Shown here one piece after another: positions 19,297 to 55,255 of a stretch of DNA of 64,000 nucleotides. Within the stretch, counting starts at the first letter, position 1; every line of letters starts with the position of its first letter. The stretch lies in IMG/VR virus record IMGVR_UViG_3300042889_001272, positions 124,001 to 188,000 of that record. One strand, given 5' to 3'. The notes beneath the pieces are model-generated. The model did not search any database. It was not told the DNA's origin and was given only the letters and a program-made list of their open reading frames with translations. Made by a program: the position numbers and the translations under genes.

Positions 19297-19300
19297 TTTT

Positions 19301-20882: not shown

Positions 20883-21425
20883 AGGATCAACGCTGATTTC
20901 ATTTATATGAAACTCAGCGGGTTGTTCTAAAATCCATTTAATATAACTAGCCGCACCCTGAATAGGAATTGTTTTCCTGTCAGGGTGTTTTGCTTGTACA
21001 TTACTTAAACTGCCAAAGCTAATTAATGTGACTCTGGGGTTCTTTGCCCAGACTCCGGACATGCCTAGACTATTAGCGTAATCGCGCAATGCTTTCTTTT
21101 CAGCATTATAAAGCCAATCTGTGGCTTTCATCACTCTGTCAGTAGTACTACCTATACAAATAATCAAAGTTTGTTTGCCTGCTAGTTTAAGTTTCTTGTA
21201 TACCGCTTCGAGTAGCAAAACTTGATTAAACTTCCATAATGCACTATTAATAATTACTGCATCATAATCAACACTCATCTCGGCAAATACTTGTTGATTC
21301 TCTGCTTTAGTTAAATCTAAATCATGAGTTGTTCTACTTACAAATGTTAATTCATGTTGTGTTAACTCTAAATTTAGTGCCTCTGCTAGACCAAAATCTG
21401 GATTACCTGATATTAATATTTTCAT
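20871..21425 (-). CDS. short-chain dehydrogenase/reductase-like protein
   Basis: ILISG..FGLA Rossmann start, IINSA, IGS, YxxxK (YNAEK). Confidence 0.7.
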   Translation of the reverse strand: MKILISGNPDFGLAEALNLELTQHELTFVSRTTHDLDLTKAENQQVFAEMSVDYDAVIINSALWKFNQVLLLEAVYKKLKLAGKQTLIICIGSTTDRVMKATDWLYNAEKKALRDYANSLGMSGVWAKNPRVTLISFGSLSNVQAKHPDRKTIPIQGAASYIKWILEQPAEFHINEISVDPLQA

Positions 21426-22588: not shown

Positions 22589-22811
22589 TTTGTTCGTAGA
22601 TAAATTTTACGTCCTTGCCCGGACCGACTTCGCTGGGCATGCCACCGTATTGCTTGACATACCATTCTATGGCTGCGATGTACCAACCTTGACTGTTATG
22701 TCTACTTTCTTTGTTAAAAATATATATATTGTCGTTGGTTGCTGGCATCGTACTTATAATGCGGGCCGCTTCTAATTGTAATTTGCGTAATGGAAGATCT
22801 TGTATATTCAT
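22581..22811 (-). CDS. hypothetical protein
   Basis: 76 aa, overlaps both neighbours. Confidence 0.65.
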   Translation of the reverse strand: MNIQDLPLRKLQLEAARIISTMPATNDNIYIFNKESRHNSQGWYIAAIEWYVKQYGGMPSEVGPGKDVKFIYEQNE

Positions 22812-23785
22812 TATACATATTTATTTTTTGTTGCCATCAAATCTGGCATACACCAACAAGTGTTATAGGGACAGATTACTCCGGAAGTAGGTAAGTTCAT
22901 AATATTTGATTCTTTCCAATTACCAAAATCTTCGTCTGTGCCTATCATACATCCACTACCCCTGCGTATTGTGCCATTGGCATCAAGTGTTATTTTATCA
23001 ACTCCTATACCACAGCTCCAATCTTTAAATTTGTTTTGTTCATCCACAAGTATCTGTCCTGTGACTTCTTGCAAGCGTTGTTGCCTCAAATATGTAAAAC
23101 TAGACTTATATATACTCTTTCTGGACTTGGCTACTTTTCTGTTTGCTTGTATATAGTTCATTTGTTCTTGTGTATATAATACTTTACTATCTGCAACAGC
23201 TTCGTATCTGTTATCCACTAATTTTAATTCGAGACTGGTAAACTCTTTGACATTGTTTAATATGTACTCGCGAGCTTCGAGTACCTTATCCCAAACTGCT
23301 GGCCAAGCAAGAATCAATATAGTCTTATATTCATTGTCCAATGCATTTATACTTTCCACAAACTTTTCTACACTTTTGACCTGTGTAGGATGATAACTGA
23401 ACACCACCGAAGATACCTGTGTACCTATTCTACGCCAATAATCTTCAGGCATTACTCCATTGGTAATAAATTTAATATTACTATCTGGACTATTTTTTTT
23501 AATTATATCTATAGCTTCGGGTAGTTTTTTCCATATAGCAAGTTCGCCGCCCAGTAATGTATATTCAAGGCGCCGACTTTTTCCATAATGTGATTGTAAC
23601 TCGCGTGTAGTGTAATCAATGCTGTCTAAACTAGGCCAGCCAAAACTACCATCATGTATTATGCTGGGACAATATTCGCAGGCATAGTTACATACGTTGG
23701 TCATTGTCCAATCAATGATTACCCAATCAGGATCTGCCTGTATCCTATCAAACAGTAAAGTTTTCATATAATTCCGGGCAGACAT
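22811..23785 (-). CDS. radical SAM protein with C-terminal SPASM/twitch
   Basis: CNYACEYC, LGGE, ITNG; WSCGIG...C...CPYNTCWC. Confidence 0.92.
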   Translation of the reverse strand: MSARNYMKTLLFDRIQADPDWVIIDWTMTNVCNYACEYCPSIIHDGSFGWPSLDSIDYTTRELQSHYGKSRRLEYTLLGGELAIWKKLPEAIDIIKKNSPDSNIKFITNGVMPEDYWRRIGTQVSSVVFSYHPTQVKSVEKFVESINALDNEYKTILILAWPAVWDKVLEAREYILNNVKEFTSLELKLVDNRYEAVADSKVLYTQEQMNYIQANRKVAKSRKSIYKSSFTYLRQQRLQEVTGQILVDEQNKFKDWSCGIGVDKITLDANGTIRRGSGCMIGTDEDFGNWKESNIMNLPTSGVICPYNTCWCMPDLMATKNKYV

Positions 23786-24947
23786 CCCGTAGACTTTGAT
23801 TGCGTTTATTATCTAATAATGATGTAAACTTTTTAAAATCATGCCAGTTTGCACTTGTTTTTGTCATAGTAAGATTTTTTTTCATATTATCCAAAAAGAA
23901 TTTATTAGCAGGATCGTATTTTTGTTCTACATACTCTATTTGTGCAAGAGCTTTTTGTTTAATACTATCTGGTGCTGTGGCAACATGCAAGTATTGTGGG
24001 TGTGTAAGTAATCTATATTCTATCCACTCGACGGGTCGTTTAATAAGAGATTCTGCCCAGTCGTAAAACTCTTTTACGTTTAGCATATTGTATATTTGAT
24101 AGCTGGCATTGGGACTGAATAAAAAGTTCTTGTATTCGTTCCTGAACTTGCATAACATGTCTATTTTACCCGTGAGTTCTTCCCAAGTGCATTGCTCTCC
24201 GCCACGCATGTATTCGAATAACTTGCCCGTACCATCTACACTGATATTAATATTAACTGATTTTGCTTTGCGTAAACGTAATAAATGTTCTTCCCGTAGC
24301 AAACTACCATTGGTTGTTATACTCAGTCTAACATTCTTTAGTATACCCGAATTGTCCAGCACATCAAATACATCCAATAAATCATTGTTAATAAAAGGTT
24401 CTCCGCCGGTTACAGTTATCATACGAAGATCTGTTAATTGTGGCAATAAGTTGGTGACAAATGTCATTAAGTCATTTCTGTTCTTTGTGTAGTCTACATA
24501 TTCTTCTCGCTTGAATCCATTGTCTCTCAGCAACTTATCGTCATTGATCCAACTGTTACTGAACATGCTGTTGCACATTCTACATTTAAAATTGCAGAGA
24601 TTACTAGTATTCAAAAACAAATGATATATGTTATTTCCAGTTTTACTGTTTTCAAAGTCTTTACTGTCCCATATATCACCATTCCACCAACGCTCATTAT
24701 TTTTCCAATTAAGACGCTGGCTTACCACGCCCTGTTTCTCTCGCTCGTGACAGGTATTACAGCCCGGTAGATTCCAAACTCCATCCACCATGTCTGTACG
24801 TAATTGCACAAACTTTCCATTGTCCCAGACATTTTGGTCTGTCATTAGTCCCATGGGCGTTGAACTCATCATGCATCTACTTATAAAACCAGCAGGATGT
24901 GTAGATATACTTGCAAATGGAATTAAACAAACTTTATCAGGTATCAT
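23748..24947 (-). CDS. radical SAM protein with N-terminal twitch-like domain
   Basis: CLIPF...RC...GCNTC; CNFKCRMC; TGGEP; TTNG. Confidence 0.92.
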   Translation of the reverse strand: MIPDKVCLIPFASISTHPAGFISRCMMSSTPMGLMTDQNVWDNGKFVQLRTDMVDGVWNLPGCNTCHEREKQGVVSQRLNWKNNERWWNGDIWDSKDFENSKTGNNIYHLFLNTSNLCNFKCRMCNSMFSNSWINDDKLLRDNGFKREEYVDYTKNRNDLMTFVTNLLPQLTDLRMITVTGGEPFINNDLLDVFDVLDNSGILKNVRLSITTNGSLLREEHLLRLRKAKSVNINISVDGTGKLFEYMRGGEQCTWEELTGKIDMLCKFRNEYKNFLFSPNASYQIYNMLNVKEFYDWAESLIKRPVEWIEYRLLTHPQYLHVATAPDSIKQKALAQIEYVEQKYDPANKFFLDNMKKNLTMTKTSANWHDFKKFTSLLDNKRNQSLRDVCPELYENFTV

Positions 24948-26106
24948 TTAGTTCTGGTACTAGCTTGGATATAGCTTCATCTCTACTTGCATCTAAAGTT
25001 GTTGTGTACTTGACAAAAGCAGGCCATTTATTATTCCAGTCTTCTGCTATCATGTAATCTATTAATGATGTCACCCTTTTAATATTCAAATAAGGTTGCA
25101 GTCGTTGTATTGCCAGCTTTTTTAAATTTTCGGGCAGGATGCGTACATTTAAATAATCAGGGTGATCCAATATGTTTAAGTGTATATCAGTTATAGACAA
25201 GTCAGTGAGATAATCAAAAAACTTGTCTAATTGTAATACATTGTATACCTGTACTGTACAATGAACTTGAAGATCTATCTTGCCCTGTTCACTCATCTCA
25301 ATAAAAGTAGCAAGATTCTTTTCCACCAAAGCCCAGCCTGTTGGATATCTAATATATCTATTGAGATCACCATGGGCATCTATGCTTGCATTGATTTTAA
25401 TCTTCTTAAAATGTTGCCAATAGTTTACTAGTTTCTTGGGCAAATTAGTACAATTTGTATTGTACTTCAAAGTAATGTTTTTAGCAAGATCTAATTCAAT
25501 TAACTTATCAAATAGTTTATATTGACTCAACGCCAAAGTTGGCTCGCCGCCTGTTAGATAAATTTCTTCAATAGTATTTGCCAACTTTAACAAGTTAACT
25601 GCAACTGCGTCGTCATTGGGCCAATCCATACTGCTAAGACGTTTAATTTCAGAATCATTTAACTGTTGCTCAACTAAATGCCATTCGTCTACCCATTGAT
25701 TACTAGCATATGGATTACACATGCGGCATTTTAAATTGCACAAGTTGCCCAAGCGTATATCAATATATTGTACTGTAAGTTCAGGAGTTGCAGTAGGTTC
25801 ATAGTCAAACATATACTTTTCATTCCAGGCTAGTCTTGAACTACGTACACCGCTGTCTTCCTCTCTAAAGCAACGTTCACACATTGCAGGCCTTTGATCT
25901 GTTAGTAGTTCACTGCGAATTTTCTTCATAGTGTCACTGTGCCAGAAATCCTGCATGTCAGGATCTGTGATCTTATACGCTTTGTTTGTTCCATTGCGTA
26001 GAATAAAGTTTTTACCGGGTGTACTATTACAGCATACTCGTAGGTTGCCACTGGCATTGGTTGCTAAATGCATCCATGGTAGAATACAGAATGTTTTACT
26101 TTGCAT
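24937..26106 (-). CDS. radical SAM protein with N-terminal twitch-like domain
   Basis: CILPW...VCC...CERC; DIRLGNLCNLKCRMC; TGGEP; YNTN. Confidence 0.93.
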   Translation of the reverse strand: MQSKTFCILPWMHLATNASGNLRVCCNSTPGKNFILRNGTNKAYKITDPDMQDFWHSDTMKKIRSELLTDQRPAMCERCFREEDSGVRSSRLAWNEKYMFDYEPTATPELTVQYIDIRLGNLCNLKCRMCNPYASNQWVDEWHLVEQQLNDSEIKRLSSMDWPNDDAVAVNLLKLANTIEEIYLTGGEPTLALSQYKLFDKLIELDLAKNITLKYNTNCTNLPKKLVNYWQHFKKIKINASIDAHGDLNRYIRYPTGWALVEKNLATFIEMSEQGKIDLQVHCTVQVYNVLQLDKFFDYLTDLSITDIHLNILDHPDYLNVRILPENLKKLAIQRLQPYLNIKRVTSLIDYMIAEDWNNKWPAFVKYTTTLDASRDEAISKLVPELNDT

Positions 26107-26836
26107 TTAATTCTTCTAATAATAAATCGTAACTTCTACACATGACTTCTGCATGTTTCTCCCCAGGCGCACCGTGTATAATCATATGAATTCTAGGTTC
26201 TGATCCTATGTGTCTAACACTATGACGTCTACCTATGTCTATTGCTCTTGCATCGCCTGGTTGCCATGGAATTAATCCCGCATCTTCCATGACAAATTCA
26301 ACTCCATCTGGATTATTGATGGCAATATTGTATGCTGCCATTTTACGAACTTCGTAGTCAGCATGTGGTTTAATATAGCCACCCGGCAATAAAAGCATAA
26401 ACCTAACACGATCGAAATGTTTGAAATTCCATGTATTTTTTAACCAGCCAACAGTTACAGGACAAACGTCTGCAATATCAGTCCACGTATACACTGGTTG
26501 TTCTGTGAAGTTATATACTTTACTGCGCCAGTCGTCGGTGGTGTATTTGTCATAGCCGTGGATTACAAGACTATGCCAGCCAGGATGCTCGTTGCCTCTG
26601 TGTTTTACAAACTCATCCATTAAAGATAACGCTTCGGCTTCTATTTCTTTTTGTGGTAACGGCAAGTCCAACTTAAGACTGGGGCAGTTGCTTTCTTTTT
26701 CTATCCAGCTAAAGTAATCTTTCATTAACTGCCTGTCTGATCTCCAATTAGAAAACTTTTCAGGGCGTGTATTTAATGAACTATAGTGTGAAAAGTCTTT
26801 CCACTCGTCGAAAAATTCTGTTACTTCGTTATCCAT
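26096..26836 (-). CDS. aspartyl/asparaginyl beta-hydroxylase-like 2OG-Fe(II) oxygenase
   Basis: RVRFMLLLPGGYIKPHAD...HSV...PRIHMIIH. Confidence 0.8.
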   Translation of the reverse strand: MDNEVTEFFDEWKDFSHYSSLNTRPEKFSNWRSDRQLMKDYFSWIEKESNCPSLKLDLPLPQKEIEAEALSLMDEFVKHRGNEHPGWHSLVIHGYDKYTTDDWRSKVYNFTEQPVYTWTDIADVCPVTVGWLKNTWNFKHFDRVRFMLLLPGGYIKPHADYEVRKMAAYNIAINNPDGVEFVMEDAGLIPWQPGDARAIDIGRRHSVRHIGSEPRIHMIIHGAPGEKHAEVMCRSYDLLLEELNAK

Positions 26837-28221
26837 GGTAATATCTCCAGTGTTTTAACTCGGTGTAAGAATTGATCTGGATTGTCAAGTATTTGTCTAG
26901 GAGTTTCATTCCTCCAATTTGACTTGATTCCCGGCCTGTTTTGATACAATTGAAACGTATCCATGCCAGCATCAGAAAATTTATCAAGAATATCTTGTTC
27001 TAGTCTATACCTGGATACTGCACTGAACAACCAAGAAGTGTTCTGATAGTGCAATATATTTGTTAAATGTACATACGTTTTTTCACCGACATGACCGGCC
27101 AGAAGTTTATTTTTCACCTGATTAACGTCGAATAAATTACACGGCTCAAATATTACATTCAAATTTGGCCATACATTTTTAATGAAATCTTCTAGGCCCT
27201 GTGGCATCATTTCATTTATAATTTCCTGCATTCTATCTAAATTGCGATCAGCTTTCATCATAGGTATCAGGTCTAATTCTGTAAACAAGCTGTACAAAGT
27301 TGTTTTAAAATTTGAATAGTTGCAGTTGATTTCTCGAAGTCGTCGTTGTATTGCCAATGAAACTGGACTAAAATCAAAAACTGTGACTCGGCCGCCGGGT
27401 TTTAATCCAGCTGTGTATGCCATGAGCAATGGAGTTATACCACTTGCGGTACATATCACTCCCTGCATGTCTGTGTCTAATAATTTTTCTGGGGGCGACT
27501 CTGTGTTTGCCGCAAAGTGACCATAGCCTTGTAAACTTTCCAATACGTCTGAAATTTTAGAGTGAAAGTCTTTGGCAACTTCTGGATATATATAATACTT
27601 ACTTTCTCTCATGGACTCATCGAAACTAACTACAGAGCTGCCAGACTTTAATGCAGTGTCGATTATGTTCCAGCCAAATCGTTTTCCTGCGTAATTTTCA
27701 ATGGCATTGCCCTGAGCGATCCAATGTGGTGTATATCCATCATGCCAATTTTCTTCACTGCGTATTGGTTTAACTGTAGACCACGGTCCGCTAAATTCTT
27801 CTTTGCCTATCAATGGTCGACCATTTGCTCGCCACCAATCCATGTTAATAATAAAACATTGATGGTGCAATTCGTAGAACTTGTCGCCTTTGTCTAATAT
27901 ATGTCCTGCAACTGCAAAGTTGGGATTATTTTCTAGAAACTTTGGAAGTACGTGATAAAAATTATCATGCTTGCTGAGATTAGTGCCCATGGCTACAATC
28001 ATCAAATATTTTAATCCGGCAACATCTGCCCATTTTAAAATAGCATCCGGATCTTTATTGCATGTTGTTGGCAGATAATAGTTTTCATTTTCCTGAACCC
28101 AGTATTCCGTTATGTTTTTAGACAGCGAAAGCGCAGTAGAGTCCTTGATATAATCAGTTATGTCCAGCCATGCCATACCGAAGCCGATGTTACTTAAATG
28201 TTTGTACTGGTAATATGCCAT
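26821..28221 (-). CDS. hypothetical protein (possible two-domain transferase)
   Basis: 466 aa; no confident family; ICTASG / VFDFS in the C-half is weakly Rossmann-like. Confidence 0.75.
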   Translation of the reverse strand: MAYYQYKHLSNIGFGMAWLDITDYIKDSTALSLSKNITEYWVQENENYYLPTTCNKDPDAILKWADVAGLKYLMIVAMGTNLSKHDNFYHVLPKFLENNPNFAVAGHILDKGDKFYELHHQCFIINMDWWRANGRPLIGKEEFSGPWSTVKPIRSEENWHDGYTPHWIAQGNAIENYAGKRFGWNIIDTALKSGSSVVSFDESMRESKYYIYPEVAKDFHSKISDVLESLQGYGHFAANTESPPEKLLDTDMQGVICTASGITPLLMAYTAGLKPGGRVTVFDFSPVSLAIQRRLREINCNYSNFKTTLYSLFTELDLIPMMKADRNLDRMQEIINEMMPQGLEDFIKNVWPNLNVIFEPCNLFDVNQVKNKLLAGHVGEKTYVHLTNILHYQNTSWLFSAVSRYRLEQDILDKFSDAGMDTFQLYQNRPGIKSNWRNETPRQILDNPDQFLHRVKTLEILPWITK

Positions 28222-28224
28222 TAA

Positions 28225-29532
28225 TTATTTCCCTGTAAATTTTTCTTTTCTTTTTACATCTAATATTTCATTGAATTTTTGAAACTTTTCGAAACTTACG
28301 TCATATTTATTTGTATCTATACACTCGTCTATCCAGCTTATTGCGTCAGCTATATGTCTCTTATTATTGATTTCTCTAATAGAATTTTCTTGCATTGATT
28401 CAAACTTTACAATCAACTTTGACTTTGCCGCTGTCAGCCTTTCTATTGGCAGAACATTTGCATGTAAAAAAGTAGGCCATTGTAAACGGCTTGTATGCCA
28501 CATTATGTCAAAGTCAGTGTCTATTGCTTCAAATGTTTCAACTAAGTACTCTACATTAAGTGCAGATATGCAAGTACTTGCCTTTATGTAATCTAACTTA
28601 TCACCCAAACTTTCTTTGGACTGTTGTATGTTTTCTTTTATGTCGTTCCATACAGAACCGTGTCTAATATAAGCATTAAGTTCGTCGTAGCCATCTATAC
28701 TGATTGTTAAACGCACCGACTTGAATTTTTTCCAAAGGTCCAGTACATTGCGACCTTTCTTTGCTTCGAGATCTGTTAAATTTGTACTGTATTTTAAAAT
28801 AACGTCACTGGGATCCTTGATACGATCCAGCATATTGTAATGCAACGGATCCATTAAAGGCTCGCCTCCGGCAAATTCGAATTCCTTGATATCATCGATG
28901 ATCTCATACAAGTCCTGCACAAATGTATTGTGTGTCTCAAATAAATTTAACACAGGTTTTTTACGTAAGTCATTGCTGTCGATGATATTATTAATATACT
29001 CCCGTTCTCCAGGTTCATAAATTTCTTTAACAGCATCCCAGTCTTGTAGCCACGGTGTACTGTCCTTGGGCCAACACATACGGCATTTTAAATTACAAAG
29101 ATTGCTTAATTTAAACTCGACAATAGGAATATTCCATGGTGATTCTTTTGTGCGTTTATATGTTGCAACTAAATGTGCATACTCTTGTGTTCTCTCGTAA
29201 TTTTGACTTTGTCTTAAACTGGTAATACCTTTGTCTTCCATTGACCAGCAAGCATTGCAATGAGGATCTCTAATACCTGATATTAGATTATTTCTGACTA
29301 TTTTATATTTTTTATGATTCCAAAGATCTCGGAATGCTATATTTTTAATATCCCAGATTTTAGTACTTCGACAGCACAGTCTAAACTCGCCATTGGTTGT
29401 GGTACTTGTGTGTATAAACGGCATTATGCAAAATGTCTTATCATCTACATCAAAACCATGCTGTTCTTTAAATAACTCGCTGGGTCTATAATCTAACAGG
29501 AATTGTTTTCCTTTTCCTTTAGCTTCATTCAT
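28225..29532 (-). CDS. radical SAM protein with N-terminal twitch-like domain
   Basis: CIMPF...LCC...CNAC; CNLKCRMC; AGGEP; YSTN. Confidence 0.93.
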   Translation of the reverse strand: MNEAKGKGKQFLLDYRPSELFKEQHGFDVDDKTFCIMPFIHTSTTTNGEFRLCCRSTKIWDIKNIAFRDLWNHKKYKIVRNNLISGIRDPHCNACWSMEDKGITSLRQSQNYERTQEYAHLVATYKRTKESPWNIPIVEFKLSNLCNLKCRMCWPKDSTPWLQDWDAVKEIYEPGEREYINNIIDSNDLRKKPVLNLFETHNTFVQDLYEIIDDIKEFEFAGGEPLMDPLHYNMLDRIKDPSDVILKYSTNLTDLEAKKGRNVLDLWKKFKSVRLTISIDGYDELNAYIRHGSVWNDIKENIQQSKESLGDKLDYIKASTCISALNVEYLVETFEAIDTDFDIMWHTSRLQWPTFLHANVLPIERLTAAKSKLIVKFESMQENSIREINNKRHIADAISWIDECIDTNKYDVSFEKFQKFNEILDVKRKEKFTGK

Positions 29533-29863
29533 TGCTGATCCTTAATCTCTTAATATTATTTAATTCTGCTTTACTCAGCTGTATGTCGGCGGCGCAGGTA
29601 CAATTTTCTTTGGTACAAATAATGGGCTCAGTGGGCACCGAGAAGCCGGTGTGTATATCTCCTAGCTTGCCGCCCACCTTACATATGGCTCTCCAAACAT
29701 TGCCGTCATTGTCTATGGTCAAATTCTGAACGCCTGCCCAGCACATCCAACCTTTGAATTTGTTCGTTTCGTTGGCCAGTAAATCATTGACATTGCTTTC
29801 TTCGCTGGTGCCGTCTTCATAATGAACTACTATGTTTGCCCAATTAGTTACTTTACTTGTCAT
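29525..29863 (-). CDS. SPASM/twitch domain; C-terminal half of a split radical SAM gene
   Basis: WMCWAG...DG...C...CTKENCTCAAD; matches the C-terminus of paralog 22811-23785. Confidence 0.75.
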   Translation of the reverse strand: MTSKVTNWANIVVHYEDGTSEESNVNDLLANETNKFKGWMCWAGVQNLTIDNDGNVWRAICKVGGKLGDIHTGFSVPTEPIICTKENCTCAADIQLSKAELNNIKRLRISNE

Positions 29864-30561
29864 TTTTTCTTATTCAACATAAAATCAAGTTCTTCTTGAG
29901 TATAGTAGTCATCTTTACATTTACCGTGCGATGTTTTTAATCCACTTAATCCCGGAACTGCCCAGATTTTTGTCTCAGGATCCAGCCTAGGTCTAATTCT
30001 TCTAATTACCCAATGCACATCATTTTCATTCATGATGTCGATTATCTCATTTGCTTCCGCCATTTTACCTGGAAGATACATCAAGTGGGTGTGTAGGTTT
30101 TGATTCTTGCGCTCTTTAACAAGTTTATTTAACTCTACGATAGTGTTAATTATCTTGTCGTGATATGCAAATTCAAAATGATAACTAAAAATATAATAAG
30201 TAATATACGGTAAACTATCAATATATTTTTGAAGTGGAACACTGCCGTTAGTAGTGACACTAATTTTATTAATACCATTGTTCTTTATTATTTTAAGAAT
30301 GTCGATAATTTTTGGATGCACAAATGGTTCGCCGCCAGTTAAACTGATACGGCATTCTTTACCCTGTGATCGAGCAACATCTGCTATCTGCTTGACTGTT
30401 TTTTCAATGACATCTAAACTTAAATGCTGACTTTCTCTGTCATGTATGTCGCTACCACAGTAGCTACAATCATAGTTACAACGTTTACCTAGATTCCATT
30501 CAATGCGTAGCCATTTGTCTTTAGGCGCATGATTGTCTTCTACCGCAACCAGTTTATTCAT
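29860..30561 (-). CDS. radical SAM core; N-terminal half of a split gene
   Basis: EWNLGKRCNYDCSYC, TGGEP, TTNG, SYH. Confidence 0.9.
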   Translation of the reverse strand: MNKLVAVEDNHAPKDKWLRIEWNLGKRCNYDCSYCGSDIHDRESQHLSLDVIEKTVKQIADVARSQGKECRISLTGGEPFVHPKIIDILKIIKNNGINKISVTTNGSVPLQKYIDSLPYITYYIFSYHFEFAYHDKIINTIVELNKLVKERKNQNLHTHLMYLPGKMAEANEIIDIMNENDVHWVIRRIRPRLDPETKIWAVPGLSGLKTSHGKCKDDYYTQEELDFMLNKKK

Positions 30562-33106
30562 TCCAATAATCCGTTAATTCGGGTATAACATTCAATACGT
30601 TTTCCTTTCGAATTTTATCCAACTCTACAGTGAATTGTTTGAATGTATTCCACTGTGTTTCGTGAATTCTATTAGATTCCAAACTACGAACTAATACCTC
30701 AAAGTCGGGTATTCCATACAATTGATCTACCATCTTTTTTCTTAGTTCAGTAGGTAGTACCAATGGACTCAGATACATCGGACTATTACATACAGTCTCG
30801 AATGCATTTGATGCACTAACTTTTTCAAATTTTTCTTCCCAACTTTTTAATTTTTTATGCAACGATTTTAGATTTAATAAATTATAGGCTTGCATAGTAA
30901 CATTAAATCCAATCTCAACGTTGGGTAATTTATTATACATGCTTATTACATCTTCTAGTTCGTCAATAGTAAACTTACCGCCACGTATATAACTATACAG
31001 TTCACCCGTTCCTTCCACACTGAACATTAAACGTACATTTTTAAATTTTTCAAGCATAGATAAAATCTTCGGATTAACGATCGTGCCATTAGTTGTGTAC
31101 TGCAAAGTGATAAATTCATTTTTCCCATATTTGATGAGTTCTTCCAAGTAGGGCACATGATTTTTTGCCATCATAGGTTCCCCTCCCTTAAAGTCTATAC
31201 GCTGTATATGTTTCATATGTCTTATAGGTTCTAATAGACTACTTAATTCTTGTTGAACTATTACTTGTTTTTCTGGATTATTTTCCTTTTCAAATTTAGG
31301 ATTAATTTTTGCCAACATCAAGTCTTCCTCAAACCATTGATTACTGGCCCATGAGCCACACATACGACATTTTAAATTACATACGTTACTAAGATTGACA
31401 TCCATCTGAGTCCAAAATAATTTCTCTTTGGTCAAAGGACGGGTATAATCATAGTCACTGGGTATTCCATTTGTAAACTTTTTGTTAAACCATTGTCTTC
31501 TACTGGTTCCTATTAAATTCTCACGTTCCCAACAACTGCTACATTCTTCTGGTTTTTCTCCTTTGAGGAACTGATTTCTTATTTTTATAATTTTTTCATT
31601 ATTAATAAAACTATCTACAATATTATCCTTACTGGCTGTTCCTAGAGACCCTTTAAACTGACAGCAAGGTTTAATATTATCATTGGCACTTATTGCAAGG
31701 CCGTGCCATGGCATTTTACAGAAGCTTTCATACTTTTCGCGTCGATATTCATTAAAATAAATTTCATAGTTACTGTAAATTTCTGGATCTAATTGTTCGA
31801 GACTTTCACCGCGTATTTCATCTAGCTCGTATGTATATTTGACAAATTCTTTAGGACCTTGCTTTGCAAGTCCCTTAACTTCAATTGGATTGTCTATTAA
31901 ATCTTCCAGTAATTTTTTTATGTCATTGATATATCTTGCTTCTGTTATAGCACTTTTGCCATTTTGGTCGCCGCGAAAAAAATCATATTTGTCAATAAGA
32001 TAATTTATTTGATCAAGACTCTTTTGCAGTATTTTTCCATTTAACCATTGTACGTGCAAAGTTTTGGGCCCTACTAATATTCTGTGCTCCATACTATGAC
32101 GATGTTTGCTACTTGTTACCGGCTTTTCTTTATCCCAGCCATAAAATTTAATTATCCATTCGATAAATTCTGCAACGTTTAATGCATTAATGGCTTGGAA
32201 GGTCCCGTTAATGTTCATTTTATAAACGCCTGGCCTCGGTTTGTCACACCAATTTCTAATTAATTCTGCCTTCTCTATAATGCCATCCCAATCTATGGCG
32301 CCTGCACTTCTAATATAGCTGAAATATCCTCTAGTACCATCTAAACTAAGATTGATGTTGACATACTTAAAACCTTCCAATGCTTCTAGATGCTTTTCTG
32401 TGATAACGCTACCATTAGTAGTAATCATTAATTCAATTTGTTTGTCCAAGCCAGCATCACGCAACATGCCCAGGAATTCCATGAATTGCGGCACAAGGAA
32501 TGGTTCACCACCTAATATCTCCACACGACGTAAATCCTTGCCATTATCCACTAATTCTCGCAACTGCTCTGTAGACAATGTATGTTTTGTTCTATCAAAC
32601 ATAGAACTTGTTCTAGCATAAGGACTGCCGGCTCCGCCTGATGCAAAGCCACGTTTTTTAAGTTTTTCCTCGTCACCTATCCATGCGTTGCTATATGCAC
32701 TGCTACACATTCTACATTTAAAATTACACAAGTTATTAAAAGCAATATCCAAGTGTACAAGTTTATTACCCGTTAGATTATTATCCCAATCAATATCTTC
32801 CCACCGATCGTCAATTACATCCAGATTCTGCCAGTGAGTACGTTTGCTGGTTACATTTTTATCTTCCTTGCTTTGACAATTTTGGCAACCCAGTGTCCAT
32901 TCTCCGTTGCGTTGGTCTTTTCTTAGATCTTGAAATGATTTGTTGTCCCATTGTTTAATAATAGAACCACTGTTAACATCACCCATTTCTGTTTCGCTCA
33001 TATGGCAGCGAACCATTTTTCCAGTAGCATGTATTGCAATGCTACTAACAGGTAGCATACATATTGTAGGACTCAGTAGTTTATTTTTATCGCCTTGTTC
33101 ACTCAT
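30554..33106 (-). CDS. tandem double radical SAM protein (two twitch-rSAM units, 850 aa)
   Basis: Unit 1 CMLP..C..CQNC / CNFKCRMC / LGGEP; unit 2 CKMPW..PCC..CSSC / CNLKCRMC / KGGEP. Confidence 0.93.
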   Translation of the reverse strand: MSEQGDKNKLLSPTICMLPVSSIAIHATGKMVRCHMSETEMGDVNSGSIIKQWDNKSFQDLRKDQRNGEWTLGCQNCQSKEDKNVTSKRTHWQNLDVIDDRWEDIDWDNNLTGNKLVHLDIAFNNLCNFKCRMCSSAYSNAWIGDEEKLKKRGFASGGAGSPYARTSSMFDRTKHTLSTEQLRELVDNGKDLRRVEILGGEPFLVPQFMEFLGMLRDAGLDKQIELMITTNGSVITEKHLEALEGFKYVNINLSLDGTRGYFSYIRSAGAIDWDGIIEKAELIRNWCDKPRPGVYKMNINGTFQAINALNVAEFIEWIIKFYGWDKEKPVTSSKHRHSMEHRILVGPKTLHVQWLNGKILQKSLDQINYLIDKYDFFRGDQNGKSAITEARYINDIKKLLEDLIDNPIEVKGLAKQGPKEFVKYTYELDEIRGESLEQLDPEIYSNYEIYFNEYRREKYESFCKMPWHGLAISANDNIKPCCQFKGSLGTASKDNIVDSFINNEKIIKIRNQFLKGEKPEECSSCWERENLIGTSRRQWFNKKFTNGIPSDYDYTRPLTKEKLFWTQMDVNLSNVCNLKCRMCGSWASNQWFEEDLMLAKINPKFEKENNPEKQVIVQQELSSLLEPIRHMKHIQRIDFKGGEPMMAKNHVPYLEELIKYGKNEFITLQYTTNGTIVNPKILSMLEKFKNVRLMFSVEGTGELYSYIRGGKFTIDELEDVISMYNKLPNVEIGFNVTMQAYNLLNLKSLHKKLKSWEEKFEKVSASNAFETVCNSPMYLSPLVLPTELRKKMVDQLYGIPDFEVLVRSLESNRIHETQWNTFKQFTVELDKIRKENVLNVIPELTDYWNE

Positions 33107-34373
33107 AATTTAATAGCCTTGCCATTTCTGGGAATGTTTTTATAAAATCTTCATTTCTAGATTTATCTACAAAGAATATTTCTTTTTTTCTTCTAGCATC
33201 TATGTCGTTTGACCATGCATCTATACTGTTCATATAATCTAGTATTTCATCTATAGTATTGTGATACTTTTCGTCAACAGTTGCTTTGGTGTTTTCTAAA
33301 TATGTCGTTAGTTCTGTCTTTATTTTTGCATTCAGCGTTCTTACATTATTTGGACTATCCATTGTTGTTACATAATGGGGAGTAAAAGATTTTATAAAAG
33401 GCATCCGTTCTAACTCTTGTAAAAAATTACCCAATGTTGCTATATTAAAAATATTAACCGTTGTATCAATAGTAGAATAGTAGTTGGATTTGCTGAAAAA
33501 ATACTCCAGGTTATTTTTTACTTCTTGCCATACTGCACCACTGCGCTGATAATCAAATTTATCGCCAATGTCATCTATGCTTAAACTCCAATGCACTGCT
33601 TTGAATTTATCAAGTATTTTTTCTTGTTCGGCAGTTGGGATAACAGTTCCGTTTGTATTATACCACAGCCATATCTTACTTGCATCATAACGATTTATGA
33701 TTGCTTTCAACATTTCGTAGTGTTCTTCGATCATCAAGGGTTCACCACCCATGATATGTATTACTCTGACGTTTTCGAACATATCGATGTTCTGCCAAAA
33801 ATCGATGTTATCAATCCACTTGGCCTGTTGATTATATTCAAATTCATGACTAGACTTGAAGTCGGAATATGTTGGATCATTTAATTTTTTTAAATCAAAT
33901 GTTTCTTTAAGCCATTTTGCACTATTCCAAAGTCCGCATATTCTACATGCCAAATTGCATCTATTGCCAGCTTTTATTTCCAACCAGATAAGTTGTTGTT
34001 CTGGAGTCTTTCCATACATTATTTCTTCTACAAAATCTGCCACTTTAGCACTACTGGTATACATATATCTGCCACTGAATCTATCTTTGGAATTTACACC
34101 CCAGCAAGGTTTACATGCAGGATGTTGCTCATTTTTAAGAAAAGATTCTCTAAACTTGATATGTGCGGGATGTTTTATAATATCTGCAATTGAACCATCT
34201 TCGACATTTAAAGGCCTGCCATCTTCTTTTATTAATGCATTACCTAAACAGCATGGGCGTATGTCCCCGTTTGATTCCACAGCTACATGGCCGAATGGCA
34301 TGACACAAAAGTTATTTGTGTCCAGCCATTTATTTATTTTGTCTTTTTTTTCAAAAGATATATAGTTAGACAT
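33099..34373 (-). CDS. radical SAM protein with N-terminal twitch-like domain
   Basis: CVMPF...PCC...CKPC; CNLACRIC; MGGEP; YNTNG. Confidence 0.93.
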   Translation of the reverse strand: MSNYISFEKKDKINKWLDTNNFCVMPFGHVAVESNGDIRPCCLGNALIKEDGRPLNVEDGSIADIIKHPAHIKFRESFLKNEQHPACKPCWGVNSKDRFSGRYMYTSSAKVADFVEEIMYGKTPEQQLIWLEIKAGNRCNLACRICGLWNSAKWLKETFDLKKLNDPTYSDFKSSHEFEYNQQAKWIDNIDFWQNIDMFENVRVIHIMGGEPLMIEEHYEMLKAIINRYDASKIWLWYNTNGTVIPTAEQEKILDKFKAVHWSLSIDDIGDKFDYQRSGAVWQEVKNNLEYFFSKSNYYSTIDTTVNIFNIATLGNFLQELERMPFIKSFTPHYVTTMDSPNNVRTLNAKIKTELTTYLENTKATVDEKYHNTIDEILDYMNSIDAWSNDIDARRKKEIFFVDKSRNEDFIKTFPEMARLLNYE

Positions 34374-35841
34374 TGTTAAATATATCCTTCATTTCAGAAA
34401 AAGTTTCGTAAAAACTAGTGCCACGGTGCTCGTCTATTTTTTCCAAATACTCTTTCATTTCCGGTAAACGTACACTCCAGTCTTCACTTTTCATGAATCT
34501 AATTAGGCCGCGCAGACGCTTGACGCCGTAGTCATTTGCAAGAAACACGTCTTTGTCCAATGTTTCACTTTGCTTGACTCCGTTCATATAGTTGTCGGTC
34601 CACCAAGGTATTAATTCTTCTTCTATCTTACGTGCAACTTCGTCTTTAAATTTCTCAGGAAGAACTTTGACATTTAAGAATGCAGGCCAATATACAAAGT
34701 GGAAATTAATACCACCTGCACCCAAAGGCCACATGTTGATCTTCTTAAAGTTTTGTGTCATTTTCCACTTAATAAATTCAGGCAAGTAATGAATGTTCAA
34801 TGCGTTAACGGCACAAGCCACTGTGACTTCTACGTTGTCAGTTGTCTGCGTATCTAATATATGAAATACTTCTTCTGTGCGCTTCCATTCACTGGGGTAA
34901 CGAATATACTCGTTGTGTGCGCCAAAAGAATCGACACTGTAATGAAAACGTACAAGTTTAAAGTGACTCCATAGTTCAAATAAGTCCTCTCTCCACTCTA
35001 CACCATTGCTATTATAACGTATTTCCATGTCTTTTGCAACCCCTTGTCGAATACATTCTTCAAGGATAGCATAGTGTTCTTCGATGATCAATGCTTCGCC
35101 TCCGGCAAAGTATAGTTGTTTCATGTGAGGAATTTGTTGATAGAACTGTTCCCAGAACACTGGATTGTTCTTATGCCAATTGTAGCTACTGCCATTGGTA
35201 CTGCCTTTGTTTTCCCAGTTCCAAATTTCTTTTACTTTATCATTTTCAATCTTAGGGTAAACTGCTTGCCAGTCTTTGATCCAACCACTACTGTCGTGCG
35301 GGCTACACATGATACAGGCTAGCTGGCATTTTGTTCCGAAGCGTAAGTCAATATATCGTAGTTTAGGCGGAACACTGCCATCTTCACTGGTTTCTTGTAC
35401 TAGTTCGTCGATGCTTACTCGCTTGCTCCAATATTCTGTTTCCCATTGGCGTTTACTTCTATGACCTGCGGCCTCTTCTTTATAACACTTTAAACAGCTT
35501 GAAGGCTTTTCACCCACCATCATTTGTGAGCGTACATTTTTCATATATGTACTGTTCCAGCTGGATTCGAAGTCCGCAACATTTAAGTTGTTGGGACGGC
35601 CTTCTTCGTCTTTTAAAATTCCAATATTGCCGCCATGTAGTTTTTCATTGGTAGCGCCTACTGAACTGGCATTGGCAGTACAACATACTCGCATTTGGCC
35701 ATCGGGACGAGTACTTAAATGTATCCAAGGTAAAATGCACCATGTTTTACTAACATTGAGATGATTTTTTGTTTGGGAAGTTCGGTCTTTGTTAACCATC
35801 ATGTCTTCGCCGGATTCGTTGGGCATAACGTTGTCGATCAT
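34366..35841 (-). CDS. radical SAM protein with N-terminal twitch-like domain
   Basis: CILPW...VCC...CLKC; CQLACIMC; AGGE; YNSNG. Confidence 0.93.
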   Translation of the reverse strand: MIDNVMPNESGEDMMVNKDRTSQTKNHLNVSKTWCILPWIHLSTRPDGQMRVCCTANASSVGATNEKLHGGNIGILKDEEGRPNNLNVADFESSWNSTYMKNVRSQMMVGEKPSSCLKCYKEEAAGHRSKRQWETEYWSKRVSIDELVQETSEDGSVPPKLRYIDLRFGTKCQLACIMCSPHDSSGWIKDWQAVYPKIENDKVKEIWNWENKGSTNGSSYNWHKNNPVFWEQFYQQIPHMKQLYFAGGEALIIEEHYAILEECIRQGVAKDMEIRYNSNGVEWREDLFELWSHFKLVRFHYSVDSFGAHNEYIRYPSEWKRTEEVFHILDTQTTDNVEVTVACAVNALNIHYLPEFIKWKMTQNFKKINMWPLGAGGINFHFVYWPAFLNVKVLPEKFKDEVARKIEEELIPWWTDNYMNGVKQSETLDKDVFLANDYGVKRLRGLIRFMKSEDWSVRLPEMKEYLEKIDEHRGTSFYETFSEMKDIFNNV

Positions 35842-37100
35842 TTTTTTAATTTCTCATATAATTGTGGAAAAGTTGTCTTCCAGTCTGTGTTTCTAATGGC
35901 ATCTAATTTTGTTACTATATCTAAACATTTATCAACTAGGCCTGAGTTGCCTTCTATATTTGTTTCTAAATAATTTACAAGATGTGCTATTTGTTTTTTC
36001 TTTTTGTCAGTTGTTGCCCACGCATTATATTTAATTAAAATATCCTGTTTTACTTCTAGTGGAAGTATTGCAACATCGAAATAATCCGGACTGCTTAAGA
36101 TTCTAACACTGGAGTTGTGTTTTTCAAATTGATCAAAATAATCTAATAAATTGGGTGTTGTGTATACACTTAAAACTTGCCACGTTACTGTGAAATCCAT
36201 TTTGATGTTAGACATTTCTTTACTTAATGTGTTTACATTCTTACTTATTTGCTGCCATGTGGCGGGGAAACGAATATATTCAAACTGATCACCAAAATCA
36301 TCTATACTAATACGTAGCCAAACTTTTTTAAAATGTTTCCACAAATTCAAGGCACGTTTGTGTATAGCAGTTAAATTTGTATCATATTCCAAAGTAACTT
36401 CGCCGGCTCTGCCACTGTCAATAACTTTTTGCAAGAAATCATAATGGGGTTCGATCAGCATGGGTTCGCCGCCCACAAGATATACTTGCTTCAAATACGG
36501 AATCTTTGCTTCTAATTTGGTCCAAAACTCTGGGTTATCCCACCAATCATATTCACCAGCATCCCTATATCTACCATCAACATCTTTTAAATTGATCTTT
36601 GTTCCACTGTCAGTGAACTTGGTTGTACCATTAAGTAAAACATAATCTTCATACCACTGACTGCTACTGGCAGGATGACACATGACACATTTTAAATTGC
36701 ACAAGTTACCAAAACGTAAATCCCAGTAACTAGGTTGCCAATCTGTGTTACCGTGTTCATCTGTATGCTGTCTAGCAATGTCTACATCAAACTCGCCATC
36801 ATACATCTTATTACTCACAGTTCTACGACTGCTTGCACCCATGTCTTCTTTGACCCAGCAGGTATTACAGTCGCTGTGACGCTGATCAGCAAGCATGGCC
36901 AATCTTATTTCTCTAGCTTTGTCGCCATTTTTAATAACGTCAAAGTCATCGCGGCCGAGATTGTAGGGCTTACCATTATTATCTCTTATTGTGCCTTGTT
37001 GACTGTCTTTACTATTGGTCATCAAGCAACAAACCCTGGCAGTGCCAATGGGCTTTGCTGCCATTTGCACCCAAGGTATAACACAAAATGTTTTATCCAT
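35838..37100 (-). CDS. radical SAM protein with N-terminal twitch-like domain
   Basis: CVIPW...VCC...CNTC; CNLKCVMC; VGGEP; YDTN. Confidence 0.93.
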   Translation of the reverse strand: MDKTFCVIPWVQMAAKPIGTARVCCLMTNSKDSQQGTIRDNNGKPYNLGRDDFDVIKNGDKAREIRLAMLADQRHSDCNTCWVKEDMGASSRRTVSNKMYDGEFDVDIARQHTDEHGNTDWQPSYWDLRFGNLCNLKCVMCHPASSSQWYEDYVLLNGTTKFTDSGTKINLKDVDGRYRDAGEYDWWDNPEFWTKLEAKIPYLKQVYLVGGEPMLIEPHYDFLQKVIDSGRAGEVTLEYDTNLTAIHKRALNLWKHFKKVWLRISIDDFGDQFEYIRFPATWQQISKNVNTLSKEMSNIKMDFTVTWQVLSVYTTPNLLDYFDQFEKHNSSVRILSSPDYFDVAILPLEVKQDILIKYNAWATTDKKKKQIAHLVNYLETNIEGNSGLVDKCLDIVTKLDAIRNTDWKTTFPQLYEKLKK

Positions 37101-54426: not shown

Positions 54427-55255
54427 CTAATTCTCCTTCTAATCCTGATTTTATTTTTCTATCTAAGTAGTCCTGACTCCTGAATATTTTAGGATCAACT
54501 GACAATGGGGATATTTCTATGTTTAACATCTTTGCATAAAAATACAATGCGTGTTCTGGGCCCACTAGATTATTACTGTTAAAACTTTTCTTTCCTATAA
54601 TCGGCAACCATCTATAAAATTCACAGATGCGGTTAAATGTAACAGTGTCAGCAAACCAAAATACGTCGCCCAATCTATGAAAAGGAAATTGTTCAGGATC
54701 TTTTCTAGTATGACAAGTATAAAAAGTATTAACTTCTGGATACACTAGATCATATCTTACAAAATGATCAATTTGATAATCATCAAAAAACATGTCGTAT
54801 CTTATCTTGATGCATAAATCATAATGAAAATCATTTTCGAACTCGTGAATTTTCTTTAAGTGAGCGGCTCTCATCACGCTATAGAATTGGCCGGCGGCCC
54901 AATCTAATTTAGTTTCACCGTGCTCATTGAGATGTACAGCATTTTGTTCGCGCACATCTTTGATTTTATTTTTGTTAGAAAATTCATCTTCAAATACACA
55001 CGCTTTGGGTTTTATTATATCTACAAATCTCTTCTTTTCATCATCAGATATTTTGTCTCCGGGCACGGTATTATAATCCCAGCCTTCGTGCATTAACAAA
55101 CGATGGGGCGGCGAATTATAATCCCATACATGACAAAATATGTCTATGTCATCGACTTCGTATGATTGTTTGATTTTATCAATTAGTTTAAACCACGTAT
55201 GATAACATTTTTCCCATGTTCGGGGTTGTCCGCTGATACAAATAGCCACTTTCAT
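54407..55255 (-). CDS. hypothetical protein, SGxxR family
   Basis: VAICISGQPR, FCHVW, YDLCIKIRYD, GD.FWF, GPE. Confidence 0.65.
   Translation of the reverse strand: MKVAICISGQPRTWEKCYHTWFKLIDKIKQSYEVDDIDIFCHVWDYNSPPHRLLMHEGWDYNTVPGDKISDDEKKRFVDIIKPKACVFEDEFSNKNKIKDVREQNAVHLNEHGETKLDWAAGQFYSVMRAAHLKKIHEFENDFHYDLCIKIRYDMFFDDYQIDHFVRYDLVYPEVNTFYTCHTRKDPEQFPFHRLGDVFWFADTVTFNRICEFYRWLPIIGKKSFNSNNLVGPEHALYFYAKMLNIEISPLSVDPKIFRSQDYLDRKIKSGLEGELGGHELI

What the first reader, a model, noticed from the sequence alone, without database searches (positions are those of the whole stretch)
23748..37100. Permuted architecture: auxiliary Fe-S (twitch) domain N-terminal to the rSAM core, with altered ligands in some copies
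Seen: seven genes in this span (plus 55252) start with C-x2-P[WF]...xCC...CxxC before the CxxxCxxC core. Known: canonical SPASM/twitch domains are C-terminal, and N-terminal-twitch rSAMs lack an established function. In 23748 (RCMM), 30554 unit 1 (RCHM) and 55252 (SCHH) the CC pair has lost a Cys. That would leave an open or His-ligated iron site, which often means substrate binding at the auxiliary cluster (inference).
Basis: partly seen in the sequence, partly recalled or inferred. Interest (0 to 1): 0.6.

Follow-up and report, generated by a model that had tools for sequence, protein, structure and literature searches.

The report
Phage array of N-terminal-twitch radical SAM enzymes
A jumbo phage carries eight genes (nine enzyme units) of a catalogued but uncharacterised radical SAM family with its extra iron-sulfur domain at the front, and the "lost cysteine" in three units is a spare fifth residue, not one of the four cluster ligands.

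Summary
Eight minus-strand genes (nine units, because 30554-33106 is a two-unit fusion) match NCBIfam NF033640 "twitch domain-containing radical SAM protein" over their full length, at 249-532 bits against a cut-off of 170. The permuted architecture is real but already catalogued, with no known function.

The interpretation does not hold. A profile of the N-terminal domain aligns to the BtrN twitch domain. The four Cys that never vary (one before the hairpin, one after it, then CxxC) fall on the only four Cys in that stretch of BtrN. BtrN's auxiliary [4Fe-4S] cluster is fully ligated by four Cys.

The residue that varies, the second C of "CC", aligns to BtrN Phe188. Across about 520 homologues (incomplete sequences excluded):
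- The four Cys are invariant.
- The variable position is C, M, Q, H, Y, F, A, T, N or I.
- The residue is fixed within each orthologue group and changes between C and non-C at least 7 times on the family tree.

An open or His-ligated iron site is therefore unlikely. The position looks like a residue that distinguishes subfamilies.

The array, the fusion and each unit's residue are kept in the same order in related phage contigs down to 67% identity. Similar arrays of 2-7 paralogues occur in Bdellovibrionota genomes. The substrate is unknown. I favour stepwise tailoring of a small anionic sugar or nucleotide-like substrate.

The parts
23748..24947 (-). N_Twi radical SAM enzyme, 399 aa. Twitch Cys C7, C25, C63, C66; variable residue M26 (codon 24870-24872); core C118/C122/C125.
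   Evidence: NF033640 at 248.6 bits. Cys numbering. The variable position is M in 99, Q in 13 and H in 2 of its 120 listed homologues. AF2 model pLDDT 95.4.
24937..26106 (-). N_Twi radical SAM enzyme, 389 aa. Twitch Cys C7, C25, C76, C79; extra C26 (CC type); core C123/C127/C130.
   Evidence: NF033640 at 377.4 bits and Pfam SPASM at residues 7-79. 118 of 118 orthologues keep CC. AF2 model pLDDT 94.8, pTM 0.91.
28225..29532 (-). N_Twi radical SAM enzyme, 435 aa. C35, C53, C92, C95; extra C54; core C146/C150/C153.
   Evidence: NF033640 at 307.3 bits and Pfam SPASM at residues 35-96.
31772..33106 (-). Unit 1 of the 850-aa two-unit fusion (gene 30554-33106). C16, C34, C74, C77; variable residue H35 (codon 33002-33004); core C127/C131/C134.
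   Evidence: Two full-length NF033640 matches, 532.3 bits in total. Numbering. The fusion and RCHMS motif are kept in loci L078-L084. An 851-aa ESM Atlas cluster has 73 members, 97% viral.
30554..31771 (-). Unit 2 of the fusion. C463, C481, C522, C525; extra C482 (CC type); core C576/C580/C583.
   Evidence: NF033640 match at residues 460-847. Numbering.
33099..34373 (-). N_Twi radical SAM enzyme, 424 aa. C23, C41, C87, C90; extra C42; core C139/C143/C146.
   Evidence: NF033640 at 280.7 bits and Pfam SPASM at residues 23-91.
34366..35841 (-). N_Twi radical SAM enzyme, 491 aa. C35, C53, C116, C119; extra C54; core C172/C176/C179.
   Evidence: NF033640 at 415.8 bits.
35838..37100 (-). N_Twi radical SAM enzyme, 420 aa. 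C6, C24, C78, C81; extra C25; core C134/C138/C141.
   Evidence: NF033640 at 373.1 bits.
55252..56652 (-). N_Twi radical SAM enzyme, 466 aa, of the S-C-H-H-P subfamily. C22, C41, C83, C86; variable residue H42 (codon 56527-56529); core C138/C142/C145.
   Evidence: NF033640 at 337.8 bits. 120 of 120 orthologues (59-93% identity) read C-H-H-P. Bacterial arrays hold SCHHP and SCY[LH]P members.
26096..28221 (-). Two genes sitting inside the array: an Asp/Arg beta-hydroxylase-like cupin (26096-26836) and a 466-aa protein with no known family (26821-28221).
   Evidence: Pfam PF05118 at 41.7 bits for the first; no Pfam or PHROG hit for the second. Both have homologues in only 2 of the bacterial and MAG loci.
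29525..30561 (-). A different radical SAM core (29860-30561, 233 aa) with a Cys-rich 112-aa downstream partner (29525-29863), also inside the array.
   Evidence: Pfam Radical_SAM at 53.3 bits. Both co-occur with N_Twi arrays in 12-15 bacterial and MAG loci.

Best explanation
**What it is.** The span encodes a conserved array of nine non-redundant modules of the N-terminal-twitch radical SAM family (NF033640), in a jumbo phage with a virus record of 235.6 kb.

**How each module is built.**
- It binds the SAM-cleaving [4Fe-4S] cluster at CxxxCxxC.
- It binds a second, BtrN-type [4Fe-4S] cluster in the N-terminal twitch domain.
- The second cluster is held by four invariant Cys: one before the beta-hairpin, one after it, and CxxC after the helix. 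This holds for the CC, CM and CH copies alike.

**The variable residue.** The residue after the second ligand (C in most members; M, Q, H or Y in particular subfamilies) is not a ligand. It is a subfamily-specific residue next to the cluster. I infer that it tunes the reaction or the substrate, for example as a hydrogen or proton donor or as a second-sphere residue.

**Inferred mechanism.**
1. SAM is cleaved reductively to give the 5'-deoxyadenosyl radical.
2. The radical abstracts a hydrogen atom from the substrate.
3. The fully ligated auxiliary cluster relays electrons, as proposed for BtrN. It does not bind the substrate the way MoaA's open-site cluster does.

**Inferred pathway.** The paralogues act in sequence on one scaffold. 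This is most likely a small anionic sugar or nucleotide-linked metabolite made by the surrounding island.
For: **Family membership.**

**The twitch domain is homologous to BtrN.**
- The whole-family profile hits BtrN 165-238 at E 3.7e-5.
- The domain profile hits it at E 1.9e-4, with Cys-to-Cys alignment and the variable residue on F188.
- BtrN's auxiliary cluster is fully ligated by four Cys (PMC9012708, PMC6231123).

**Conservation.**
- The four Cys are invariant in the 9 units, in 360 metagenomic homologues and in 153 homologues from bacterial loci, apart from truncated sequences.
- The fifth position reads C 112, H 15, Y 8, and A, F, M, T, N, I, Q in smaller numbers.
- It is 118/118 C, 120/120 H and 99/120 M within the three homologue sets.
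- A tree of 225 rows needs at least 7 changes between C and non-C.

**Structure models.** pLDDT 94.8 and 95.4, with hairpin and helix placed as in a twitch domain. The core matches BlsE (Z 13.9), viperin (13.9) and anSME (13.6).

**The array is a conserved pathway.**
- Gene order, the fusion and each unit's residue are conserved in IMG/VR loci at 67-99% identity.
- Paralogues are only 19-42% identical to each other.

**Context.**
- MetK lies in the window.
- The record has 17 Radical_SAM matches.
- The island holds carbamoyltransferase, NTP-transferase/kinase, aldolase-like and shikimate-DH-like genes.
- A glycosyltransferase and a methyltransferase lie beside an N_Twi gene in a 3-Mb Bdellovibrionales contig.
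- Invariant Arg residues R64, R253 and R375 (24937 numbering) are compatible with an anionic substrate handle. This last point is inference.
Against: - **No direct data.** There is no metal analysis, no coordinates and no assay. Ligation rests on homology and conservation.
- **SkfB precedent.** In SkfB the conserved pre-hairpin Cys sits about 12 A from the cluster in the crystal (PMC6231123). A conserved Cys is therefore not proof of ligation.
- **Role of the fifth Cys unexplained.** It is kept in about three quarters of the family and is strictly conserved within orthologue groups.
- **Weak substrate inference.** Most neighbours in the phage and in bacteria have no Pfam family. Peptide-modifying SPASM enzymes (SkfB, CteB, anSME) score as well as sugar or nucleotide enzymes in fold searches.
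Confidence: 0.65

Rival explanations
1. In CC copies the second Cys is a true cluster ligand, so CM and CH copies carry an auxiliary cluster with an open, His-ligated or Met-ligated iron. That iron would bind substrate, as in MoaA.
For: - The fifth Cys is the majority state in the family.
- The replacements His and Met can ligate metal.
- In SkfB a conserved pre-hairpin Cys is not bound in the crystal (PMC6231123), so one of the four invariant Cys might be dispensable.
- Pfam's SPASM model fails to reach E 0.01 on 23748 and 55252.
Against: - All four BtrN-equivalent ligand positions are invariant in every copy, including those without the fifth Cys.
- The variable position is F in BtrN and A, F, I, T, N or Y in natural family members.
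- Two adjacent residues rarely bind the same cubane cluster (general knowledge, not tested here).
- Models of the CC and CM copies are equally confident, with the same secondary structure.
Confidence: 0.1
2. The enzymes are peptide or protein maturases, RiPP-like or acting on a virion protein such as the nearby Gly/Tyr-repeat protein (60694-61773). They would not be small-molecule tailoring enzymes. The cluster chemistry would be the same but the substrate a polypeptide.
For: - Many characterised SPASM/twitch enzymes modify peptides. SkfB, CteB, anSME and SuiB are among the best structural and profile matches.
- NCBIfam gives weak hits to cyclophane and sactipeptide maturases.
- A protein with long GYGYGY repeats lies in the same window.
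Against: - No RiPP recognition domain and no other N-terminal domain was found; the N-terminus is the twitch domain itself.
- No obvious short precursor ORF lies beside the 7-copy array in L044. The phage array has overlapping genes with no room for one.
- Seven to nine different paralogues per locus is unlike the usual one maturase per precursor.
- All hits to named maturases fall far below their cut-offs.
Confidence: 0.2
3. The N-terminal Cys motifs bind zinc, or only stabilise the fold, and carry no redox cluster.
For: Four-Cys sites spaced as C...C plus CxxC also occur in zinc ribbons. No metal data exist for this family.
Against: - There is significant profile homology to the BtrN twitch domain with ligand-for-ligand alignment.
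- Pfam SPASM hits pass the gathering score in 4 of the 8 proteins (5 of the 9 units) and reach E < 0.01 in 2 more.
- The models show twitch-type hairpin-helix topology.
Confidence: 0.05

Closest known systems
NCBIfam NF033640 (N_Twi_rSAM), twitch domain-containing radical SAM protein
   Same: All nine units match end to end, well above the curated cut-off. They share the domain order (twitch, core, helical C-terminal region) and the same invariant Cys.
   Different: Nothing structural differs. The family has no assigned reaction, and the searched library holds no paper naming it. What this locus adds is the setting: nine units in one phage array, a two-unit fusion, and subfamily-specific residues after the second ligand.
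BtrN (butirosin 2-deoxy-scyllo-inosamine dehydrogenase; PDB 4M7T/4M7S), the archetypal twitch enzyme
   Same: - The twitch domain is homologous, with the four Cys ligand positions aligned one to one.
- The auxiliary cluster is expected to be fully Cys-ligated.
- Both have a partial TIM-barrel radical SAM core.
- BtrN acts on a small carbohydrate-like substrate.
   Different: - BtrN's twitch domain is C-terminal; here it is N-terminal, a domain permutation.
- BtrN has Phe where most of this family has a fifth Cys.
- Outside the twitch domain only general radical SAM similarity is seen.
- These proteins add a helical C-terminal region of about 80 residues.
MoaA (GTP 3',8-cyclase), a twitch enzyme with a three-Cys, open-site auxiliary cluster
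   Same: Twitch-type radical SAM enzyme. There are profile and fold matches to the core.
   Different: MoaA has only three Cys ligands and binds GTP at the free iron (PMC9012708). Every unit here keeps four. All moaA model scores are far below their cut-offs (35-68 bits against 284).
Viperin/pVip and BlsE, nucleotide- or nucleoside-sugar radical SAM enzymes
   Same: They are the best structural matches to the core: BlsE Z 13.9 and viperin Z 13.9. There are weak hits to pVip and viperin models.
   Different: Viperin has no auxiliary cluster domain (from my own knowledge, not checked here). Scores are far below the family cut-off (at most 68 bits against 180). There is no evidence of the same reaction.

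Membership tests
NF033640 N_Twi_rSAM | Whole-protein HMM score above the curated cut-off of 170 bits, with end-to-end coverage | tested here: met
   Scores of 248.6-532.3 bits, covering model positions 1-2 to 388-398, for all eight proteins. The 850-aa protein gives two domains. The six-frame search of the virus record agrees.
NF033640 N_Twi_rSAM | Twitch/SPASM-type Fe-S domain placed N-terminal to the CxxxCxxC core | tested here: met
   - Pfam SPASM lies at residues 7-79, 35-96, 16-78, 23-91, 35-120 and 6-82, ahead of Radical_SAM.
- The profile hits the BtrN twitch domain.
- The models show hairpin plus helix before the core.
Twitch domain with a fully ligated cluster (BtrN type) | Four Cys at the positions before the hairpin, after the hairpin and CxxC after the helix | tested here: met
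   The four aligned to BtrN C169, C187, C232 and C235. They are invariant in 9 units plus 513 homologues, apart from truncated sequences.
Twitch domain with a fully ligated cluster (BtrN type) | An actual [4Fe-4S] cluster bound by those four Cys | not testable with these tools
   This needs Fe/S analysis, Mossbauer or EPR, or a structure. The model tools return no coordinates or cofactors.
Twitch domain with an open iron site (MoaA type) | Only three protein ligands to the auxiliary cluster | tested here: not met
   All copies, including the CM and CH ones, keep four canonical Cys. The lost Cys aligns to a non-ligand position, BtrN F188.
Full SPASM domain (two auxiliary clusters) | Seven-Cys motif CX9-15GX4C-gap-CX2CX5CX3C-gap-C | tested here: not met
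   Only the CX12-13GX4C and CX2C parts are present. There is no CX5CX3C and no trailing conserved Cys.
Prokaryotic viperin (NF038283 / PADLOC pVip) | Score above the curated cut-off of 180 bits | tested here: not met
   Best score 67.6 bits, summed over two units. PADLOC pVip scores 28-46 bits over the core only.

The most novel reading that the evidence does not exclude
The nine-unit array would be a phage-borne (and Bdellovibrionota-borne) radical assembly line that builds a heavily tailored sugar-, nucleotide- or glycan-type product. The residue after the second twitch ligand would act as a built-in reaction-type switch. For example, Cys could be a hydrogen-atom donor for epimerase or reductive outcomes, as Cys223 is in EpeE, while His, Met, Gln or Tyr would give oxidative or other outcomes. 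The enzyme's chemistry could then be read from one position. The opposite-order split pairs in the same genome would record how the domain permutation arose.
Probability: 0.15. Interest if true: 0.8.

Novelty: new member of a known kind. Interest (0 to 1): 0.45.

Why it matters
- **Corrects a tempting misreading.** Counting cysteines suggested open iron sites. Alignment to a solved twitch domain, together with natural variation, shows the ligand set is intact.
- **Points to a large uncharacterised family.** The word searches gave 439 to about 8,000 homologues at E <= 1e-10. ESM Atlas clusters are 90-97% viral. Members occur as conserved multi-paralogue arrays in jumbo phages and Bdellovibrionota.
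- **Offers a starting point for experiments.** A phage carrying at least 17 radical SAM domains and its own SAM synthetase is investing heavily in radical chemistry whose product is unknown. The array supplies nine natural variants of one scaffold, so the family's reactions and the role of the variable residue can be tested directly.

Tried and rejected
- **Single-sequence search of solved structures.** The 24937 protein found nothing relevant. Only profiles reached BtrN.
- **Cultured phages.** The megablast search found no near-identical DNA. tblastn gave only 22-28% identical hits in RsoM2USA, Vibrio K566/K567 and one marine virus.
- **Literature.** No paper names N-terminal twitch, N-terminal SPASM or NF033640. 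The jumbo-phage search gave nothing relevant.
- **BtrN ligand numbers.** A search for them returned unrelated papers. The BtrN structure paper and the SPASM/twitch review are not held. The numbers C169, C187, C232 and C235 therefore come from the alignment, from statements in two held papers that BtrN uses four Cys, and from my recollection.
- **Model coordinates.** They are not exposed. I could not measure Cys-Cys distances or where residue 26 points.
- **Pfam and PHROGs scans of neighbours.** Mostly blank, so substrate inference stayed weak.
- **Defence-gene (pVip) reading.** Rejected on score.
- **Precursor-peptide search.** The search beside the bacterial array in L044 found nothing convincing.
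- **Tools left unused.** The large representative-protein search was not needed, because the family scans settled identity. Read laying and the look-up of sequencing runs were also not used.
Full report
**1. What is there**

The window is bases 124001-188000 of a 235,561-bp IMG/VR virus record estimated to be 66% complete. It carries phage-type genes:
- ThyX, GTP cyclohydrolase I and SAM synthetase.
- An AAA ATPase 52% identical to that of PA5oct-like jumbo phages.

ORF listing shows a tightly packed minus-strand block. Seven genes in 23748-37100, plus 55252-56652, all match NCBIfam NF033640 "twitch domain-containing radical SAM protein" over the full model. Scores are 248.6-532.3 bits against a cut-off of 170. 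The 850-aa product of 30554-33106 holds two complete units, so there are nine units in all. A six-frame search of the record gives the same count.

Pfam places a SPASM-type Fe-S domain ahead of Radical_SAM in six of the eight proteins. The described motif is present in every unit: C-x2-P-[WFV] ... C-X ... CxxC, then CxxxCxxC. Gene 55252 reads C-I-A-K-W instead.

**2. Is a ligand missing?**

I built a profile of the N-terminal domain from 81 diverse members (alignment A4) and searched the sequences of solved structures. The only significant hit is the twitch domain of BtrN, 4M7S residues 166-238, at E 1.9e-4. The whole-protein profile also hits it, at E 3.7e-5.

In that alignment:
- The family's four invariant Cys fall on the only four Cys in that stretch of BtrN (C169, C187, C232, C235).
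- The variable residue falls on F188.

Two held papers state that the BtrN twitch provides four Cys that fully ligate its [4Fe-4S] cluster. One Cys lies before the hairpin, one after it, and two after helix alpha-2' (PMC9012708; PMC6231123, Fig. 5 legend).

AF2 models of the CC copy (24937) and the CM copy (23748) are both very confident (pLDDT 94.8 and 95.4; pTM 0.91 and 0.92). Both show this topology: Cys, hairpin, Cys-X, helix, CxxC.

**3. Natural variation**

| Sequence set | Four twitch Cys | Variable position |
|---|---|---|
| 360 homologues from three word searches | invariant except in truncated sequences | see the next three rows |
| Homologues of 24937 | invariant | C in 118/118 |
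| Homologues of 23748 (down to 33% identity) | invariant | M 99, Q 13, H 2 |
| Orthologues of 55252 | invariant | H in 120/120, within C-H-H-P |
| 153 homologues from 77 bacterial and MAG loci | invariant | C 112, H 15, Y 8, plus A, F, M, T, N, I, Q |

A FastTree of 225 family rows needs at least 7 changes between C and non-C. The states cluster by clade, and none of 500 label shuffles needed as few changes.

Residues such as Ala, Phe and Ile cannot bind iron, so this position is not an obligatory ligand. With four Cys kept there is also no vacant iron for His or Met. The open or His-ligated site is therefore not supported. The strict conservation within each orthologue group points instead to a residue that defines subfamilies.

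Two limits apply. The tools give neither coordinates nor metal content. SkfB also shows that a conserved Cys can sit away from the cluster in a crystal (PMC6231123).

**4. The array as a unit**

The nine units are only 19-42% identical to each other. Related IMG/VR contigs at 67-99% identity (L078-L084) nevertheless keep the following in the same order:
- the gene order;
- the two-unit fusion;
- each unit's residue: CCLMT, CCTAN, CCLG[ND], RCHMS+CCQ, CCRST, CCNST, RCMMS.

ESM Atlas has a 322-member cluster (90% viral, TM 0.96) and a 73-member cluster of 851-aa fusions (97% viral).

In cellular genomes the family is concentrated in Bdellovibrionota MAGs. It commonly forms arrays of 2-7 paralogues there, including 7 copies on a 1.9-Mb chromosome (L044). 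Some small "MAG" contigs look phage-derived, such as L005, L017 and L066.

Other radical SAM types in the window co-occur with these arrays in 7-15 loci: 21422-22588, 29860-30561 with its partner 29525-29863, and 41015-42190. The record as a whole has 17 Radical_SAM matches.

**5. Function**

No solved structure or paper assigns a reaction to this family. The core resembles BlsE (Z 13.9), viperin (13.9), anSME (13.6), CteB and SkfB about equally.

The surrounding island contains:
- an Asp/Arg-hydroxylase-like cupin, a carbamoyltransferase and an NTP-transferase/kinase;
- aldolase-like, shikimate-DH-like and nitroreductase-like genes;
- many genes with no known family.

One Bdellovibrionales locus has a glycosyltransferase and a methyltransferase next to an N_Twi gene. 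There is no RiPP recognition domain, and no obvious precursor ORF.

I therefore favour sequential radical tailoring of a small anionic sugar- or nucleotide-linked substrate, with the fully ligated auxiliary cluster acting as an electron relay as proposed for BtrN. This step is inference. A polypeptide substrate remains a real rival.

**6. A side observation on the permutation**

The window holds two paralogous split systems in opposite gene order:
- On the plus strand, a twitch-only ORF (18952-19296; Pfam SPASM 25.3 bits) comes just before a core ORF (19265-19972).
- On the minus strand, a core ORF (39567-40235) comes just before a SPASM-only ORF (39281-39607; 31.8 bits).

The small ORFs are 37% identical (E 7e-22) and the cores 46% identical (E 3e-72).

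A complex prediction for the first pair passed its controls. The score was 0.75, against 0.00 for the best of 3 controls. In calibration this mark was reached by 51 of 78 solved complexes and by 2 of 108 mismatched pairs. The runs agree in at least 64% of their contacts, and the partner's pLDDT is at least 64. The twitch hairpin (residues 17-24) lies against core residues 20-27. The model supports binding but does not show it. The result fits a twitch module that can work whatever its order along the gene. That would make an N-terminal fusion an easy evolutionary step.

**7. Verdict**

- **Observation:** confirmed.
- **Architecture:** real, but already catalogued as NF033640.
- **"Altered ligand / open iron" interpretation:** not supported.
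- **What remains interesting:** the conserved nine-unit phage array of an uncharacterised family, and a subfamily-specific residue beside the auxiliary cluster.
- **Novelty:** new member of a known kind.
- **Interest:** 0.45.

Noticed in passing
window 18952-19972 (+) and 39281-40235 (-): Two paralogous split twitch/core radical SAM gene pairs lie in opposite gene order. One has the twitch ORF first and the other the core ORF first, and each pair overlaps by 32-41 nt. The small ORFs are 37% identical and the cores 46%. The complex prediction for the first pair scored 0.75 against 0.00 for the best of 3 controls. That mark was reached by 51 of 78 solved complexes and 2 of 108 mismatched pairs. 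Contact agreement was at least 64% and partner pLDDT at least 64.
   Followed up: yes
window 21422-22588, 22811-23785, 29860-30561, 41015-42190 (all -); whole record G000: At least four further radical SAM genes of other types lie in the window. The 235.6-kb virus record has 17 Radical_SAM Pfam matches. Several of these types co-occur with N_Twi arrays in 7-15 bacterial and MAG loci.
   Followed up: partly
window 57-794 (+), 1866-2726 (+), 3064-4164 (+): The phage encodes GTP cyclohydrolase I and a complete SAM synthetase (MetK), both confirmed by Pfam. An ORF that looks QueE-like by eye had no Pfam hit at E 0.001, although NF033640 and Radical_SAM models touch it weakly. This may be a 7-deazaguanine pathway, with the phage also supplying its own SAM.
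   Followed up: partly
window 60694-61773 (-): A 359-aa protein has a long Gly/Tyr repeat (GYGYGY... and GNGGGYGY units). It lies beside genes that look like tail-fibre genes. Its function was not examined.
   Followed up: no
window 43034-45432 and 56654-57640 (-): Four paralogous genes with no Pfam family share an N-terminal FLSYDEPNADENY...VHGVKGF motif. Homologues sit next to N_Twi genes on contig L005, which is probably phage-derived.
   Followed up: partly
window 37093-38936, 51013-51837, 52593-53549 (-): Several proteins start with a GDSF/GDSW-type motif reminiscent of SGNH/GDSL hydrolases. Only 52593-53549 has a Pfam hit, to DUF6071.
   Followed up: no
window 7316-8230 (-), 8217-10592 (-): A phage-encoded TctC-like periplasmic binding protein has a signal-peptide-like N-terminus (Pfam 28.7 bits). 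Two tandem paralogues of about 386 aa carry a PP-loop-like SxGxDS motif. Pfam found no family for the one tested, 8217-9377; its paralogue 9429-10592 was not scanned.
   Followed up: no
loci L001-L077 (genome contigs): Cellular homologues of the family are heavily concentrated in Bdellovibrionota MAGs, often as arrays of 2-7 tandem paralogues. L044 has 7 copies on a 1.9-Mb chromosome. Some short MAG contigs (L005, L017, L066) share many phage genes with the window and may be mis-binned phage DNA.
   Followed up: partly
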